The notes beneath the pieces are model-generated. The model searched no databases. It had not been told where the DNA came from and saw only the letters and a program-made list of their open reading frames with translations. A program made the position numbers and the translations under genes. Positions 1,128 through 46,400 of a DNA stretch of 64,000 nt are shown one piece after another (position 1 is the stretch's first letter; every line of letters begins with the position of its first letter). This stretch comes from Macrostomum lignano (taxonomy: Eukaryota), in assembly GCA_002269645.1 (NCBI GenBank), contig NIVC01000751.1, forward strand, positions 192,249 to 256,248, in the 5' to 3' direction.

Positions 1128-1153
1128 AAAACGGCCCTTTTCAGGGCCACCAC
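1128..1153 (+). terminator. Histone mRNA 3' stem-loop (SLBP site)
   Basis: AAAAC-GGCCCT-TTTC-AGGGCC-ACCAC: 6-bp stem, 4-nt loop, canonical flanks, about 90 nt after the H2B stop. Confidence 0.95.
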
Positions 1154-1539
1154 ATTCAAATTGTGCTCTACATTGCAGTCTTGAAACATACATAGGCTAG
1201 GGGCCTAGTAATAATTGTTTTTAAAGGCCATTTAATTGAACGAGTCTAGTGCCGTGAGGGGGTCCATGTGCCGTAGCCGTATTCAAAAATTTTATTCGGT
1301 TTTCCGTAAGCGTAGTGAGTTGTGACCCCAAAATTACCATATTTCTGTAGGCTAGCTGTAGCCATAGAGGAAAAACAGAACAGAGTCCTTCCGTTAAAAC
1401 TTGATCATCAATCGAATTCTATTGATACTAAACTAAAGATTATACTCAACTAAATACTCTCACTTATGTTGTCTGTAATATGTCTACACAAACTCTATGA
1501 ACTACTGCATGTACGGTACAGTTATGATTATGGACCGGA

Positions 1540-40400: not shown

Positions 40401-43400
40401 TGGCACCTCTTTGCGTTGCAGTCGCTGGTGTTGCTGTTGGATCTGCTGCAACTGTTGCAGCTGTTGCAGTTGCTGCAATTCGGAACTGCGAGGAGTTGAC
40501 AGGCTGTTGCTGCGACCTCGGCCAGCCAGGTCCAGCTCCGGCTTTCTAAATCCGTAGCTAACCGGCTGCTGAGACGACTGTTGAGACGACTGCTCGTGCG
40601 ATCGTTGAGATTCGTCGGCTGTGTTGAGACTGTCCTGACTGCCGGCTTTGTTCAGGCTGCCGTGGCTGGCCGAGCGGGGCATGGCGTGGCTCGACTGCTC
40701 CGTCTGAAGGTTGACGAAATGGCGATAGGTTTTGAAACAATCCCTGCATTGATTCCCCATTGTGTCTCTAGAACTTTGGCAAAGATGTCAGTCGAAGGAC
40801 TGAAACAGTCTTCTTTCAAAGCTGACACCGATCACTGGAAAAGCACATCCCCCGGAAGCAGACACTCCGGAAGCAGACCTTCTGGAAGCAGACCCTCTCA
40901 AGACAGACACTCTGGAAGCAGACCTTGTGGAAACGGACCCTCTGGAAGCAGACACTCTGGAAGCAGACACTCTGGAAGCAGACACCCTGGAAGCAGACAC
41001 CCTGGAAGCAGACACTTTGGTGGCAGATAATCAAAAAGAAGACCCTCTGGAAGCAGACCCTCCGGAAGCAGACAATATGGAATAGAAGATAGCAATAGAA
41101 GATAGACTCACAAAAATTGGCGGCTTCTGCTTGTCGCGATGCTGCAACGAAGCTCTCGGTTTCCTTGGCGACGGTGGATTGGGCTGATGGCCCTGGTAGC
41201 TGAAGCTGCGCTGAAATACCGGATGCTGCGGCTGGGGCTGTTGCGGCTTTTGAGTCTTTTGCTTTTGCCATTCCTCCAGCCAGACAGCCTCTGCAGTGTC
41301 CAGCAGCATCGGAGATCCTTGATCACCAGAGGCGTCTTCTGTTGCCATGGCAACCGACAGGAAAGTGTCAACTAGATCTAGAAACGCCGGCTCCAATTCG
41401 TGCTGCCGACAGCCGATTGGCGGCAGGTCGAATGGCGGCGTCGGCCATTGAAACAACTCGGCTGATGCCTTCTCTGTTACCATGGCAACCGACTCGTTGC
41501 TGTCAATCGCAGTCGGCGGCGGCGGTTGCTGACTTCGCCGAAGCCGGTAATAATCAGCCAGAGTGTTGTTCGGCTGGGCGGCGTCAGCCGGCTCGTCAGA
41601 GTCGGAGTCGGGCGGGCCCAGCGGCAGCCGGGACCAGTCCTCGTCTACCAGGCGCTCCAGCCGCAGCTGAGCCACCCCGGCAAGGCTGTTGGACAGGCTT
41701 GCCAACAGATCGGCCAGTTGTCTGCGAGTGTTTCAAAATGCATTGGTGCGTACTGATAGTAGTGTAGTTCGGTGGAGCAAAAATGAACAAAGCTTTTTTG
41801 AGCTCAGTGGTCTAGCGCGGCGTGTTTGATGTGCCAGCGACCCAGGCTCGATTCCAGGTGCAGTCACATTAATTTTGGGGCTAAATTGGAATCTCGGCTT
41901 GGCTCTGCTCGTGCAATTACGGCCTTGAGGGCCAACCCCTAAGGCACAGTGAAGTGTACATGCCTAACGATAAATAAAGATAGGGCCGCTGTACACTCCT
42001 GTGTGAGTGTGTGCCTGTTCAGAAGTCGGCGGAATGGGCCGTAATGCCTCTCGCCGGTTGTGTTATAATGTCGTTCAAAGTGCACCAGGGTGCACAGTCC
42101 CTGGTCTCTTAATGAAAATTAAAAACGGCCCTTTTAGGGCAGATTTATGAGTGCATTCATACGTGTATGCAAGGAGACAATCCCAATTTTCCAAATTTCA
42201 CTCGCTTGCTTTTAGAATTTAGATAATAAGTGTTTAAATTATATACATTTCGCACATCAAAATATTATCCGCGCTTAAGATGCATAAGACGACCCCTTTA
42301 AGACTTAACTTTCAGGAATACAAACTGAAAGTAATCATTTTCTTAGGTTATGTAGAGCCTGGATTTTTTGCAAACAAAAACAGTTTTTAAACAAACTTCA
42401 AAGCCAGAAAAATTTCCCATTTTGTAAACATTTTTAATTTTAACACGAGACGAATTGCATAAAACGGCCCTTTTAAGGGCACACGAATTCCGGCGTATCT
42501 TTCAGGACGCACATGTGGTCGTGACTTCAGCTACTATTGAATATTTTTGCAGTCATATAATCTTTCCTATATAAGCTCTCTATTTTATACGAAACTTCCT
42601 TTTACCAATATCCATGGATACAGTTACGGACTAGGGATTCCAAAATCCCGACATTTTACAATCCCGGGATTGAATAGTCCCGAAATCCCGATGCTGTTGA
42701 AATCCCGGGATTCAAAATCCCGGAATCCCGGTGCTTTTGCAATCCCGGGATTCGATTCCCAAAAAAATCCCGGGATTCAAATCCCGGATTTTTGGCCCCA
42801 ATCCCGGGATCCCGGGATTGGAATCCCTATTACGGAGGCACCAATTAAAAAACACTATCAAACTTAAATCTTATCAATTTTATTACCTATCCTGCGGTAA
42901 ATCGGCCGCCAAGCCCAACAGCAGACAGTGCAGGCTGTGCCAGTCTGTGAAGAGTCCCCAGCGAGCCAGCGGCACCAAATGCAGAGTCCAGGCCAGACAA
43001 TCGGCAGACTTGGCTGACCAGACTGCATCGACATCGGCAGCAATGTCACCTGTTGCCGGCTGCAGAGCCAAGGCGGAGCGCTCTCTGGCCAGCAGCGACA
43101 GTCGATCGCGGCAGTGCAAAGCCCACAGGCAGCTGGCCAGGTCGCGAACCGCCGACACGCAGCTGACGGTCGACGCTCCACCGTCAAGCCGTCCTGCCGC
43201 TGCGCCACCATCGTCTTCAGCATCCGTTGACCTCAGCACGGAGGCGAACAAACCGGCACTCCGCTCCAGGTGTCTCCGCAGTTCAGGCTGGCCCAGATGT
43301 CGGCAGGCGGTGAGCAGGCTCCGGCAGTAGCGCCGGAACATGGGCGAAAGCGTGTTGGACGCGCGCAGGGACAACAGGAACAGGCGAACAATGCTCCAGA

Positions 43401-46400
43401 TTCGCTGGCGTTGTCCAGCTTCTGGCGACTGGTCAGCCGCTCCAGCAGTTCCCGCAGGCTGCGGGCAGTAGGCTGGCGGAGCCGGCAGGTAAGTGCCAGT
43501 TGGCACCAGAGCTGGCATCAACGACATCACCGAATGCAACTCGCGAAGAAGCCGACGAAGGAACGGCTCCAGCAGGGGTGTCTCGGTGACGCAGCCAGCC
43601 AGAAAGCAGTCTGTCAGCGCCTGCAAAGCCTCTTTGTCTGGCGTTGCCGATCGAACTGAAATATCGAAGGAAATTCGCAACGGAACAGTTAAAACGGCCC
43701 TTTTACGGACAACATATGAAATTGAAGAGTTCTTTATGGACTAATATAAGCGCTTACCATCCTGAACCACTAGTCTGTCGAATAGCAGATCCAATTTATC
43801 GGTGAGAATTTGTTGAACAGATCTTGTGCTGGTCTCATTCGACACTCGAATTGAGCTGCAATTAGTGTTAATTAATTATGTTAATTATTTATGTACTTAC
43901 AGGCACAAAGGAGATACTCCTTCGACTAACAGGTGATGTAATTAATGTAACAAGTATATAAAATCCTCCCATGTAACAAGTTTAATCTTACAGGCAAAGT
44001 ACCCAATCTAACAGGTAAAATTCCAATCTAACAGGTAAAATCCCTAATATAACAGGTAAAATCCCCAACCTAATAGGTAAAATCCCTAATCCACCAGGTG
44101 AAAAAGTTCAACATACCAGGCCAACGCGTCCCTCTGCTGCAATTCCACAGCCAGCGACCGGAGATAGGTGAGCACCAGTGCCGACTTCCAATCGGACAGC
44201 TGTCCGGTCACGTGAATAGCCTCGTCCAACAGTCCGGACACCAGGTGTAATTCTACGCATTTCTCGGCCGTCCAGCTGGCCTCAAGGCCGTCTCGGCGAA
44301 TCAGTTCAATCACGGTGGAGTGCAGAAACGGCATCCGGTTCTTGTCTGCGTTGGCGGCGAGGATGCGGAGATGTGGTTTCAGTTAATTACTAGCTAGCTG
44401 ACTGACTGACTAACTAACTAACTAACTAACTGATTAACTAACTAACTAACTAACTAGCTAACTAACTAACTAACTAACTAACTAACTAACTAACTAGCTA
44501 ACTAACTAACTAGCTAACTAACTAACTAACTAACTAACTGATTAACTAACTAACTAACTAACTAGCTAACTAACTGACTGACTGACTAACTAACTAACTA
44601 ACTAACTGATTAACTAACTAACTAACTAACTAGCTAACTAACTAACTAACTAACTAACTAACTAACTAACTAACTAACTAACTAACTAGCTAACTAACTA
44701 ACTAACTAGCTAACTAACTAACTAACTAACAAACAAACAAACAAACAAACTAACTGACTAACTAACTAACTGATTAACTAACTAACTAACTAACTAACTA
44801 ACTAACTAACTAACTAACTAACTAACTAACTAACTAACTAGCTAACTAACAAACTAACAAACAAACAAACAAACAAACTAACTAACTGACTAACTAACTA
44901 ACTAACTAACTAACTAACTAACTAACTAACTAACTGATTAACTAACTAACTAACTAACTAACTAACTGACTGACTAACTAACTAACTGACTAACTAACTA
45001 ACTAACTAACTAACTAACTAACTGACTAACTAACTAACTGACTAACTAACTGACTAACTAACTAACTGACTAAACTAACTAACTAACTAACTAACTAACT
45101 AACTAACTAACTAACTAACTAACTGACTGACTAACTAACTGACTAAACTAACTAACTAACTAACTAACTAACTAACTAACTAACTAACTGACTGACTGAC
45201 TAACTAACTGACTAACTAACTAACTAACTGACTAAACTAACTAACTAACTAACTAACTAACTAACTAACTGACTGACTGACTAACTAACTAACTAACTAA
45301 CTAACTGACTAAACTAAATAACTAACTAACTAACTAACTAACTAACTAACTAACTAACTGACTGACTAACTAACTGACTAACTAACTAACTAACTGACTA
45401 ACTAACTAACTGACTAACTAACTAACTAACTAACAAACTAACTAACTAACTGACTGACTGACTAACTAACTAACTAACTAACTAACTGACTAAACTAACT
45501 AACTAACTAACTAACTAACTAACTAACTAACTGACTAACTAACTAACTAACTAACTAACTAGCTAACTAACTAACTAACTAGCTAACTAACTAACTAACT
45601 AACAAACAAACAAACAAACTAACTAACTGACTAACTAACTAACTGATTAACTAACTAACTAACTAACTAACTAACTAACTAACTAACTAACTAACTGATT
45701 AACTAACTAACTAACTAACTAACTAACTAACTAACTAACTAACTAACTAACTAACTAACTAACTAACTAACTGACTGACTAACTAACTAACTAACTAACT
45801 GATTAACTAACTAACTAACTAACTAGCTAACTAACTGACTGACTGACTAACTAACTAACTAACTAACTAACTAACTAACTAACTAACTGACTGACTAACT
45901 AACTAACTGACTAACTAACTAACTAACTAACTGACTAACTAACTAACTGACTAACTAACTGACTAACTAACTAACTGACTAAACTAACTAACTAACTAAC
46001 TAACTAACTAACTAACTAACTAACTAACTAACTAACTAACTAACTGACTAACTAACTGACTAACTAACTAACTAACTGACTGACTAACTAACTGACTAAC
46101 TAACTAACTAACTAACAAACTAACTAACTAACTGACTGACTGACTAACTAACTAACTAACTAACTGACTAAACTAACTAACTAACTAACTAACTAACTAA
46201 CTAACTAACTGACTAACTAACTAACTAACTAACTAACTAGCTAACTAACTAACTAACTAGCTAACTAACTAACTAACTAACAAACTAACTAACTAACTGA
46301 CTAACTGACTAACTGACTAAACTAACTAACTAACTAACTAACTAACTAACTAACTAACTAACTAACTGACTAACTAACTAACTAACTAACTAACTAGCTA

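What the first reader, a model, noticed from the sequence alone, without database searches (positions are those of the whole stretch)
1128..43724. A dispersed family of orphan histone 3'-end stem-loops, all on the + strand, away from any histone CDS
The core AAACGGCCCTTTT of the true H2B stem-loop (1128-1153) recurs four more times: about 1698, 42122, 42461 and 43691. Similarity extends into the flanks (AATGAA..TAAAACGG upstream; ACA..AAATTG downstream), so these look homologous to the histone 3' end rather than chance 13-mers. None has histone coding sequence upstream. Three cluster within 1.6 kb in CPLANE1 introns 10-11, antisense to that gene. Established: this hairpin is bound by SLBP and directs poly(A)-independent 3' cleavage and S-phase decay. 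Inference: either (a) a tiny mobile or captured module spreads histone 3' ends, or (b) SLBP-type ends are co-opted to terminate or destabilise antisense/non-coding transcripts. Either would be an undescribed system as far as I know.
Basis: partly seen in the sequence, partly recalled or inferred. Interest (0 to 1): 0.8.

Follow-up and report, generated by a model that had tools for sequence, protein, structure and literature searches.

The report
Scattered fragments of histone stem-loop signal
A flatworm (Macrostomum lignano) genome segment carries one working histone mRNA end-signal plus four short, broken copies of it away from any histone gene; they are real copies, not chance, but they look like inserted or duplicated relics rather than a new RNA-ending system.

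Summary
AAACGGCCCTTTT occurs five times, all on the + strand (1129, 1699, 42123, 42462, 43692), against 0 expected. It is the only non-tandem 13-mer dispersed four or more times in the window. The window is Macrostomum lignano contig NIVC01000751.1.

Copy 1 is the genuine H2B 3' stem-loop. It is part of a 32-nt block that is invariant in five H2A/H2B genes, followed by a conserved downstream element. Copy 2 is a degenerate duplicate 570 bp downstream, with one stem mismatch, a 5-nt insertion and no downstream element.

Copies 3-5 are 21-45-nt patches in two adjacent introns of a CPLANE1-like gene, antisense to it. They have no 6-bp stem with a 4-nt loop, no ACCA flank and no downstream element. 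They get no Rfam Histone3 hit and score 9-14 bits on a species-specific model, against 74-82 bits for genuine sites. No histone coding traces lie upstream.

Two related units are flanked by direct repeats around a 26-nt insert, which suggests insertion. One oddity remains: the 5' half is almost invariant (4/120 changes) while the 3' half is decayed (29/88).

A mobile module is weakly supported. Co-opted SLBP-type termination is not supported. A genome-wide census and transcript data could not be obtained.

The parts
677..1042 (+). Histone H2B coding sequence (121 aa)
   Evidence: Pfam Histone, E 9.8e-24. The identical protein is found on three M. lignano contigs.
1121..1175 (+). Copy 1: genuine H2B 3' signal. 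It comprises the invariant block GAACGCTAAAACGGCCCTTTTCAGGGCCACCA (6-bp stem, UUUC loop, ACCA flank) and a downstream element CAAATTGTGC.
   Evidence: Rfam Histone3 32.2 bits, E 2e-5; the curated cut-off is 34, and all five genuine M. lignano sites score 32-33. The 32 nt are identical in 3 H2B and 2 H2A genes. MFE -11.4 kcal/mol. H2A and H2B share downstream similarity (z = 4).
1691..1730 (+). Copy 2: degenerate duplicate of the signal, AAACGCTGAAACGGCCCTTTTCAGGTCCAC-TCCAC-CACAT. It has a C.U mismatch in the stem, a 5-nt duplication after the stem, and no downstream element.
   Evidence: Rfam Histone3 15.7 bits; species model 29.5 bits; MFE -4.2. It is present with the same mismatch in the sister contig (L001 4465).
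42116..42143 (+). Copy 3: AAATTAAAAACGGCCCTTTTAGGGCAGA. It has an extra A in the 5' flank and a 5-bp stem with a 3-nt loop. It is flanked by TTAATGA (42109-42115) and TTTATGA (42144-42150).
   Evidence: No Rfam hit; species model 9.0 bits, E 5; MFE -7.6. The flanking repeat is not significant on its own (p 0.18).
42457..42482 (+). Copy 4: 26-nt unit GCATAAAACGGCCCTTTTAAGGGCAC. It has a 5-bp stem, a UUUA loop and a mismatched first pair. It is flanked by the exact 7-bp direct repeat ACGAATT (42450-42456 and 42483-42489).
   Evidence: No Rfam hit; species model 11.9 bits; MFE -8.8. Flanking repeat p 0.0165 against random non-repeat positions.
43676..43717 (+). Copy 5: CGCAACGGAACAGTTAAAACGGCCCTTTTACGGACAACATAT, with no stable stem. 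It resembles the last ~44 nt of the H2B 3' region (CGCTACAATGAACGCTAAAACGGCCCTTTTCAGGGCCACCACAT). It is flanked by GAAATT (43670-43675 and 43718-43723) and sits about 35 nt from the apparent 3' splice site of the minus-strand exon.
   Evidence: No Rfam hit; species model 13.6 bits, E 0.5; MFE -0.8. Flank similarity to H2B p 0.002 downstream and 0.02 upstream.
42883..43680 (-). Long minus-strand ORF (265 aa), taken as an exon of the CPLANE1-like gene. It separates copies 3-4 from copy 5.
   Evidence: ORF list. The summed minus-strand ORFs are needed to reach the 3230-3240-aa product called in the sister contigs. This ORF has no database homologue, so exon status is inferred.
58930..58940 (+). 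3'-half-only fragment CAGGGCCACCA (loop C, 3' arm and ACCA), with no 5' half.
   Evidence: Exact 11-mer. By my estimate about 0.07 such matches are expected by chance in the 153 kb examined, so this is suggestive only.
61195..62645 (+). Minisatellite: 23-nt unit AAACATAAAAGAGCCACCATGTC, about 63 copies. The unit contains AAGAGCCACCA, which is the 3' arm plus ACCA of the common animal histone stem-loop. AAGGGCCAC lies just upstream at 61055.
   Evidence: Tandem Repeats Finder; pattern scan. The link to the stem-loop is an inference made after seeing the data.

Best explanation
Only copy 1 is a working histone mRNA 3'-end signal. By established knowledge, SLBP binds the 5' flank, stem and loop, U7 snRNP pairs with the downstream element, and the pre-mRNA is cut after ACCA.

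The other four copies are short patches (about 21-45 nt) copied from histone gene 3' ends. They are not competent SLBP/U7 processing sites.
- Copy 2 most likely arose by local duplication of the H2B processing region and then decayed. Tandem second and third stem-loops after one histone gene also occur in unrelated eukaryotes.
- Copies 3-5 most likely arose as small insertions of a stem-loop-containing fragment into two adjacent introns. Their 3' halves were imperfect from the start or soon after. This step is inferred from direct repeats around 26-28-nt inserts and from variants shared with units at another locus.

The carrier of the insertions is not established. It could be cDNA of a histone transcript 3' end, or filler DNA captured during break repair. 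The near-invariance of the 5' half is not explained by simple decay and remains open.
For: - The sites are not chance.
- The genuine signal is defined in this species by a 32-nt block invariant in five H2A/H2B genes, plus a conserved downstream element.
- Scores fall into tiers. Genuine sites score 74-82 bits on the species model. Orphans next to histone genes score 17-37 bits. Copies 3-5 score 9-14 bits. On Rfam Histone3, genuine sites score 32-33, copy 2 scores 15.7, and copies 3-5 give nothing.
- Homology to genuine flanks is short and significant. There is no similarity beyond it and no histone coding trace.
- Direct repeats flank 26-nt inserts at copy 4 (7/7, p 0.0165) and at L002 2033 (10/11, p 0.0073). 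Combined p for the five intron-type units is 0.018.
- 3' variants are shared between unlinked loci: TTTTAAGGGC- in copy 4 and L002 2385; loss of the loop C in copies 3 and 5 and L002 2033.
- The orphan upstream of H2B differs between sister contigs by a G-to-A change at the second stem G. This fits no constraint on SLBP binding.
- Precedent for local duplication: two and three perfect tandem stem-loops after one H4 gene and one H2B gene in metagenome contigs L028 and L059.
Against: - The 5' 15 nt show 4 changes in 120 positions, against 29 in 88 for the next 11 nt (Fisher p 7e-9). This holds even after allowing for the way the sites were found: P(at least 7 of 8 exact) is 1e-3 or less for divergence of 10% or more. 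Plain neutral relics should not look like this. The conserved half is the one that carries the base-specific SLBP contacts (my own knowledge of the SLBP-RNA structure), so weak SLBP binding under selection is not excluded.
- The direct-repeat evidence rests on two sites and was looked for after seeing the data. Over all eight orphans the combined p is 0.07.
- In copy 5 the similarity seems to run into the downstream element (AAATTG). That does not fit an origin from mature mRNA.
- In 191 kb of histone-bearing contigs of other eukaryotes there is no unit with an exact 13-mer and a broken stem. Some process specific to this lineage is therefore at work and is not identified.
- No genome-wide census, sister-contig comparison of 42-44 kb or transcript data could be obtained.
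Confidence: 0.5

Rival explanations
1. The intron-type units are the extreme 3' tails of an uncharacterised non-LTR retroelement or SINE family. Its 3' end mimics, or was captured from, the histone stem-loop. Severely 5'-truncated copies of 26-45 nt were inserted by target-primed reverse transcription.
For: - Direct repeats of variable length (7 and 11 bp) flank inserts of the same size, 26 nt.
- Sub-variants are shared between unlinked loci.
- All copies have an exact 13-mer and none has 1-2 mismatches, which suggests youth.
- A tRNA-like A/B-box head lies about 260 nt upstream of copy 3.
- In other eukaryotes, ORFs of a kind known from CR1-like elements (GDSL esterase) are followed by a perfect histone stem-loop (L012 and L047).
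Against: - No longer copy and no shared sequence 5' of TAAAAC were found in 153 kb.
- There is no 3' tail repeat or poly(A).
- No units occur in 70 kb of other M. lignano loci.
- All five being 45 nt or shorter would be an unusual truncation profile.
- No reverse-transcriptase ORF is associated.
- Copy 5 and copy 2 resemble H2B-specific 3' UTR sequence rather than a common element.
Confidence: 0.2
2. The units are functional, weakened SLBP-binding sites. They have been co-opted on non-histone or antisense transcripts for termination, destabilisation or S-phase coupling, or as SLBP landing pads.
For: - The conserved half (5' flank, 5' arm, loop Us) is the half that carries sequence-specific SLBP contacts (my own knowledge).
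- The 5'/3' asymmetry is strong.
- Most units keep a 4-5-bp hairpin.
- The units occur in local clusters: three within 1.6 kb, and pairs 339-360 bp apart at three places.
- Such units are absent from other eukaryotes sampled, which would fit a lineage-specific innovation.
Against: - None has the downstream element needed for U7-dependent cleavage.
- Copy 5 has no stem, and copy 3 has a 3-nt loop.
- There are no Rfam hits.
- The second stem G is mutated in one sister-contig copy of the orphan upstream of H2B.
- No plus-strand gene or ORF ends upstream of copies 3-5.
- In human cells SLBP has no targets other than replication-dependent histone mRNAs (PMC4604434).
- No expression data are available.
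Confidence: 0.12
3. They are the last recognisable remains of whole histone genes (orphons or pseudogenes) that were duplicated to these places and whose coding sequences have decayed away.
For: - Orphans are concentrated around H2A/H2B genes: at least 7 in about 19 kb of histone loci.
- Pairs of units are spaced about 340-360 bp apart. This matches the spacing of the genuine stem-loop and its downstream orphan at L002.
Against: - There is no coding trace at E<5.
- A 13-mer kept perfect in every copy is incompatible with decay deep enough to erase 300-400 nt of coding sequence.
- Copies 3-4 and copy 5 lie in different introns separated by an exon, so they cannot be one decayed segment.
- Homology ends sharply within about 10-20 nt of the stem-loop.
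Confidence: 0.08

Closest known systems
Replication-dependent histone mRNA 3' stem-loop (Rfam RF00032), with SLBP and the U7 snRNP histone downstream element
   Same: Copy 1 is a standard member. It follows the H2B stop codon by about 90 nt and has a 6-bp stem GGCCCU/AGGGCC, a UUUC loop, an A-rich 5' flank, ACCA and a conserved downstream element. The sequence TAAAACGGCCCTTTT[C/A/T]AGGGCC is the histone stem-loop of many other eukaryotes: 60 of 83 metagenome matches sit right after a histone coding sequence. Copies 2-5 share the 5' flank, 5' arm and loop Us exactly.
   Different: Copies 2-5 do not follow a histone gene, lack the downstream element and ACCA, and have imperfect or no stems. Copies 3-5 are not detected by the family model.
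Histone orphons and histone pseudogenes (dispersed solitary copies derived from histone gene clusters; from my own knowledge, first described in sea urchin)
   Same: They are dispersed elements derived from histone gene units and found away from the functional genes.
   Different: Orphons and pseudogenes carry coding sequence. Here only 21-45 nt around the stem-loop are present and no coding trace is detectable.
Tandemly duplicated histone 3' processing signals
   Same: A second stem-loop lies a few hundred bp downstream of the first, on the same strand. This is seen here for H2B in the window, L001 and L002, and in unrelated eukaryotes (L028: two after H4; L059: three after H2B).
   Different: In L028 and L059 the repeats are perfect and keep the same downstream sequence. 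In M. lignano the downstream copies are degenerate and the intervening DNA is no longer repeated.
Short retroposed or repair-captured inserts flanked by target-site duplications (LINE-mediated retroposition of small RNAs; filler DNA at repaired breaks)
   Same: Inserts have sharp ends and are flanked by direct repeats of variable length (7 and 11 bp).
   Different: There is no poly(A) or tail and no identified reverse-transcriptase source. The insert is only 26 nt, which is the size of the SLBP target quoted in PMC4604434 and would be smaller than any described retroposed unit that I know of. The evidence rests on two sites.

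Membership tests
Histone 3' stem-loop processing signal (RF00032 / SLBP-U7) | 6-bp stem with a 4-nt loop | tested here: not met
   Met by copy 1 only. Copy 2 pairs 5 of 6 (C.U mismatch). Copy 3 has 5 bp with a 3-nt loop. Copy 4 has 5 bp with the first pair G.A. 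Copy 5 has no stable stem, MFE -0.8.
Histone 3' stem-loop processing signal (RF00032 / SLBP-U7) | A-rich 5' flank, G at the second stem position, U at loop positions 1 and 3 | tested here: met
   TAAAACGGCCCTTTT is identical in copies 1, 4 and 5. Copy 2 has TGAAAC and copy 3 has an extra A.
Histone 3' stem-loop processing signal (RF00032 / SLBP-U7) | ACCCA/ACCA 3' flank (cleavage site, 3'hExo contact) | tested here: not met
   Copy 1 has ACCA. Copy 2 has AC-TCCACCACA after a 5-nt duplication. Copies 3-5 have AGAT, (A)CAC and AACA.
Histone 3' stem-loop processing signal (RF00032 / SLBP-U7) | Histone downstream element at a fixed distance | tested here: not met
   H2A and H2B genes share ACCACAT(N1-2)AAA(T/A)TGTGC. 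None of copies 2-4 has it. Copy 5 has AAATTG at a similar place, but it doubles as a flanking direct repeat. The U7 snRNA of this species is unknown.
Histone 3' stem-loop processing signal (RF00032 / SLBP-U7) | Lies within about 100 nt downstream of a histone stop codon | tested here: not met
   True for copy 1 only. tblastn finds no other histone coding sequence in the window.
Histone 3' stem-loop processing signal (RF00032 / SLBP-U7) | Score on the family covariance model | tested here: not met
   Copy 1 scores 32.2 bits; the cut-off is 34 and all genuine M. lignano sites score 32-33. Copy 2 scores 15.7. Copies 3-5 give no hit at E<=10.
Histone 3' stem-loop processing signal (RF00032 / SLBP-U7) | RNA 3' end formed at the site; SLBP bound | not testable with these tools
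   No transcript or binding data for M. lignano are reachable.
Retroposed insertion (non-LTR / SINE-type) | Target-site duplication flanking the insert | tested here: inconclusive
   Copy 4 has 7/7 and L002 2033 has 10/11 (p 0.0165 and 0.0073). Copy 3 has 6/7 (p 0.18). Copy 5 and L002 2385 show none next to the unit. Fisher p is 0.018 for the five units and 0.07 for all eight orphans.
Retroposed insertion (non-LTR / SINE-type) | Common 3' end with variable 5' truncation into a shared longer consensus; 3' tail | tested here: not met
   There is no shared sequence 5' of TAAAAC and no tail. The sample is only 153 kb.
Retroposed insertion (non-LTR / SINE-type) | Empty site in a sister copy of the locus | not testable with these tools
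   Sister contigs L004 and L005 end about 1.8 kb short of the region. The CPLANE1-like protein needed to fetch more could not be retrieved.
Histone orphon / pseudogene | Recognisable histone coding sequence next to the stem-loop | tested here: not met
   tblastn at E<5 with five histone classes finds none.

The most novel reading that the evidence does not exclude
Macrostomum lignano has a lineage-specific family of tiny units (about 26 nt, the size of the SLBP footprint) derived from the 3' end of histone transcripts. Under this reading they are either written into the genome by reverse transcription or repair capture of SLBP-protected, 3'-trimmed histone RNA ends, or kept because their intact 5' half still recruits SLBP. 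The first would explain an intact 5' half, a ragged 3' half and flanking duplications. Either would be an undescribed way for the histone stem-loop to spread or act outside histone genes.
Probability: 0.2. Interest if true: 0.75.

Novelty: new variant of a known kind. Interest (0 to 1): 0.4.

Why it matters
SLBP and the histone stem-loop are regarded as a closed system. In human cells the only SLBP targets are replication-dependent histone mRNAs, and only one non-histone genomic match to the stem-loop was found (PMC4604434). Here, eight independent stem-loop-derived units outside genes turned up in about 150 kb. Their SLBP-contact half is preserved and their other half is degraded. This is unusual against that background, and also against 191 kb of histone loci from other eukaryotes. 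If it reflects insertion of histone RNA ends, it is a new source of small insertions in a stem-cell-rich, repeat-rich genome. If it reflects selection, SLBP would have non-histone roles in flatworms. If it is only local debris of histone gene turnover, it is ordinary. It is still a useful warning that motif matches to the stem-loop do not mark processing sites.

Tried and rejected
- **Chance:** rejected.
- **Decayed histone genes:** no coding traces found.
- **A longer repeat or transposon body around the units:** blastn of 41.7-44.4 kb against 153 kb of M. lignano DNA finds only the 21-mer. Flank-against-flank alignments with shuffles find nothing.
- **A composite element bounded by two units:** the 339-bp and 352-bp spacers are unrelated.
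- **Tail of the tRNA-like SINE head at about 41.8 kb:** a second head at 61.1 kb is only 69% alike, distances to the unit do not agree, and one B-box match lies in a coding exon.
- **Footprint or inverted-repeat end of a DNA transposon:** the 13-mer is a near-palindrome. However, the flanking repeats differ in length (7 and 11 bp), and the similarity to histone flanks argues for histone origin.
- **U7-like small RNA gene upstream of copy 4:** only a 7-nt match to an expected anti-downstream-element, and the hairpin is too short. Dropped.
- **Assembly error in homopolymers:** this could 'repair' copy 4 to a perfect stem-loop. It is unlikely, because five genuine sites are assembled perfectly.
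- **Fetching the sister-contig copy of 42-44 kb:** failed. The exon query found nothing. The concatenated exon query found only a UniRef fragment, P0121, which is on no contig. The representatives search returned P0121 itself.
- **Literature searches:** searches for stem-loops linked to retrotransposons, for Macrostomum histone stem-loops and for orphons gave nothing relevant.

Full report
**Observation**

The 13-mer AAACGGCCCTTTT occurs exactly five times in the window, at 1129, 1699, 42123, 42462 and 43692. All are on the + strand, and there are no matches in 100 dinucleotide-preserving shuffles. Every occurrence of the shorter GCCCTTTT is one of these five sites. After collapsing tandem arrays and the 7.4-kb segmental duplication, it is the only 13-mer of normal complexity present at four or more dispersed places in the window.

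**Source and gene setting**

- The H2B protein encoded at 677-1042 is found on three contigs of assembly GCA_002269645.1. One of them, NIVC01000751.1, is 100% identical to the window.
- That assembly and the names of matching proteins identify Macrostomum lignano.
- Copies 3-5 lie between long minus-strand ORFs of a large gene. The gene has a Pfam Joubert domain. Its N-terminal exons map to 54917-49363 on the minus strand. It has distant relatives about 3000-3700 aa long. In the sister contigs it is called as a 3230-3240-aa product, with an intronless TRP-like channel gene nested on the other strand.
- 'CPLANE1 introns, antisense' is therefore reasonable. The intron numbers were not checked.

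**What the genuine signal looks like in this species**

Three H2B genes and two H2A genes share an invariant 32-nt block, GAACGCTAAAACGGCCCTTTTCAGGGCCACCA. It is followed by a similar downstream element, ACCACAT(N)AAA(T/A)TGTGC (H2A against H2B downstream z = 4).

Rfam Histone3 scores these sites 32.2-33.3 bits, just below the curated 34. A covariance model built from the five sites scores them 74-82 bits.

A scan of metagenome contigs shows that TAAAACGGCCCTTTTNAGGGC is a common histone stem-loop across eukaryotes. Of 83 matches, 60 sit directly after an H2A, H2B, H3, H4 or H1 coding sequence. A few are bacterial terminators.

**The orphans**

In 153 kb of M. lignano DNA (the window plus six loci) I found eight independent units outside genes.

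- *Orphans next to histone genes.*
  - One lies downstream of H2B. This is copy 2, present with the same stem mismatch in the sister contig L001.
  - A different one lies 360 bp downstream of the L002 H2B.
  - One lies about 700 bp upstream of H2B, just outside the window start.
  - These score 17-37 bits on the species model and 16-27 bits on Rfam.
  - Copy 2 and the upstream orphan keep the AACGC 5' flank.
  - Copy 2 reads AAACGCTGAAACGGCCCTTTTCAGGTCCAC-TCCAC-CACAT. It has one C.U mismatch and a 5-nt duplication, and there is no downstream element.
- *Intron-type units.* These are copies 3, 4 and 5, plus two on the strand opposite H2B in L002.
  - They share only TAAAACGGCCCTTTTA(A)GGGC.
  - They score 9-14 bits, not significant.
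  - The three in the window give no Rfam hit even in a 1.9-kb search at E<=10.
  - Copy 3 folds as 5 bp with a 3-nt loop. Copy 4 folds as 5 bp with a UUUA loop. Copy 5 does not fold.
- None of the eight orphans has histone coding sequence nearby.
- None shares anything with the others beyond the core.
- No unit occurs in 70 kb of three other loci, or in the remaining ~60 kb of the window.

**Are they derived from histone 3' ends?**

Yes. Conditional on the 13-mer, the adjoining flanks still resemble genuine flanks for copies 2, 4 and 5 and for the histone-linked orphans. The downstream p is 0.0003-0.002. Copy 5 matches about 44 nt of the H2B 3' region, CGC.AC..GAAC..T.AAAACGGCCCTTTT.A.GG.C.A.CA.AT.

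**How did they get there?**

- Copy 4 is a 26-nt insert between exact ACGAATT repeats.
- The L002 2033 unit is a 26-nt insert between TCAAAGATTTA and TCAAAGAATTA.
- Copy 3 is a 28-nt insert between TTAATGA and TTTATGA.
- Against random non-repeat positions searched in the same way, these give p = 0.0165, 0.0073 and 0.18. The combined p is 0.018 for the five intron-type units and 0.07 for all eight orphans.
- Variants of the 3' half are shared between unlinked loci. Copy 4 and L002 2385 both read TTTTAAGGGC followed by a missing C. Copies 3 and 5 and L002 2033 have all lost the loop C.
- Copies 3-4 and copy 5 are in different introns, so at least two events are needed.

Together this favours small insertions, or copies of already-imperfect masters, over decay of whole genes. 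The evidence is thin and was sought after seeing the data.

For copy 2, local duplication of the processing region is the simplest origin. Perfect double and triple stem-loops after a single H4 or H2B gene exist in unrelated eukaryotes (L028 and L059).

**What is not explained**

Across the eight orphans, the 15 nt TAAAACGGCCCTTTT carry 4 changes in 120 positions. The next 11 nt carry 29 in 88. Allowing for the fact that sites were found through the 13-mer, seven of eight exact 13-mers is still very unlikely under one rate (p from 1e-3 at 10% divergence to 4e-9 at 30%). No copy with 1-2 mismatches exists apart from two histone-linked ones.

In 191 kb of histone-bearing contigs from other eukaryotes, no unit with an exact 13-mer and a broken stem was seen. 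In human cells only one non-histone genomic match to the stem-loop was reported, and SLBP had no non-histone targets (PMC4604434).

Two readings fit this asymmetry.
- The 3' halves were ragged from birth, for instance copies of 3'-trimmed or U-tailed histone RNA ends. The L002 2033 unit ends in AGGGG followed by a run of Ts.
- The 5' half, which carries the sequence-specific SLBP contacts, is under selection or is homogenised against the many genuine copies.

Against selection for SLBP binding, the orphan upstream of H2B has G-to-A at the second stem G in this contig but not in the sister contig. Divergence of the histone-linked orphans between sister contigs, about one change in 30 nt, matches the 5-9% background.

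**Verdict**

Only copy 1 is a processing signal. Copy 2 is a decayed local duplicate. Copies 3-5 are short stem-loop-derived patches that fail the defining features of the signal.

A 'mobile or captured module' has weak support. 'Co-opted SLBP-type termination' has none beyond the conserved 5' half.

The decisive data could not be reached with the tools. These are a genome-wide census, an empty-site comparison between subgenomes, and poly(A)-minus 3' ends. I rate the finding as a new variant of a known kind (dispersed debris of histone gene units), of moderate interest because of the unexplained asymmetry and the insert-like flanks.

Noticed in passing
window 61195-62645 (and 61051-61064): A 23-nt minisatellite of about 63 copies. 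Its unit, AAACATAAAAGAGCCACCATGTC, contains AAGAGCCACCA, the 3' arm plus ACCA of the common animal histone stem-loop. A variant, TATAAGGGCCACAAT, lies just upstream. It may be an amplified half stem-loop fragment. It lies upstream of the CPLANE1-like gene.
   Followed up: partly
window 58930-58940: An exact CAGGGCCACCA (loop C, 3' arm and ACCA of the M. lignano signal) on the + strand, with no 5' half. By my estimate about 0.07 are expected by chance in the DNA examined.
   Followed up: partly
L003 2294-2322 (3-31 nt before window position 1); L001 2330-2358: A further orphan stem-loop lies in the H2A-H2B spacer, about 700 bp upstream of the H2B start, on the + strand. It is perfect in L001 (Rfam 27 bits) and has G-to-A at the second stem G in the window's own contig.
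   Followed up: yes
L002 2033, 2385 (minus strand) and 3788 (plus strand): A solitary H2B locus has three more orphan units. Two lie 352 bp apart on the opposite strand upstream of H2B. One lies 360 bp downstream of the genuine stem-loop and is followed by ACCA three times. Pairs spaced about 340-360 bp recur at three places, counting copies 3-4 (339 bp).
   Followed up: partly
L012 1032-1552; L047 505-1077; L014 589-1230 (minus strand): In metagenome contigs of unknown eukaryotes, two GDSL-type esterase ORFs and one Tpt1/KptA ORF are followed within about 20 nt by a perfect histone-type stem-loop. These are non-histone genes, possibly of mobile elements, that seem to use the histone 3' end.
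   Followed up: partly
L028 496 and 672; L059 2318, 2487 and 2733: Perfect double and triple tandem stem-loops, with the same downstream sequence, follow a single H4 gene or H2B gene in other eukaryotes.
   Followed up: partly
window 8797-16185 and 16190-23568: A direct tandem segmental duplication of 7.4 kb at 99% identity. It is itself full of micro- and minisatellites.
   Followed up: partly
window 26904-30347 (+): An intronless gene for an ankyrin-repeat TRP-like cation channel (1147 aa). By the gene calls of the sister contigs, it is nested on the opposite strand inside the CPLANE1-like gene.
   Followed up: partly
window 44389-47333: A 2.9-kb (ACTA)n microsatellite inside an intron. About 44% of the window is tandem-repetitive by a simple 12-mer test. 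It produces spurious weak mir-341 hits.
   Followed up: no
window 41796-41865 and 61105-61165: tRNA-like heads with A-box and B-box motifs (GCTCAGTGG ... GGCTCGATTCC; GGTTCGAATCT) on the + strand. They are possible SINE heads. ARAGORN and Rfam call no tRNA.
   Followed up: partly
window 1545-1625 and 42627-42834: Two palindromic structures. One is a long near-perfect inverted repeat, AGGCAGTGCTTATCCCCACGG...CCGTGGGAATAAGCACTGCCT, between copies 1 and 2, at the point where the sister contig has about 440 bp more. The other is a cluster of AATCCCGGGATT palindromes resembling a foldback or MITE between copy 4 and the exon.
   Followed up: no
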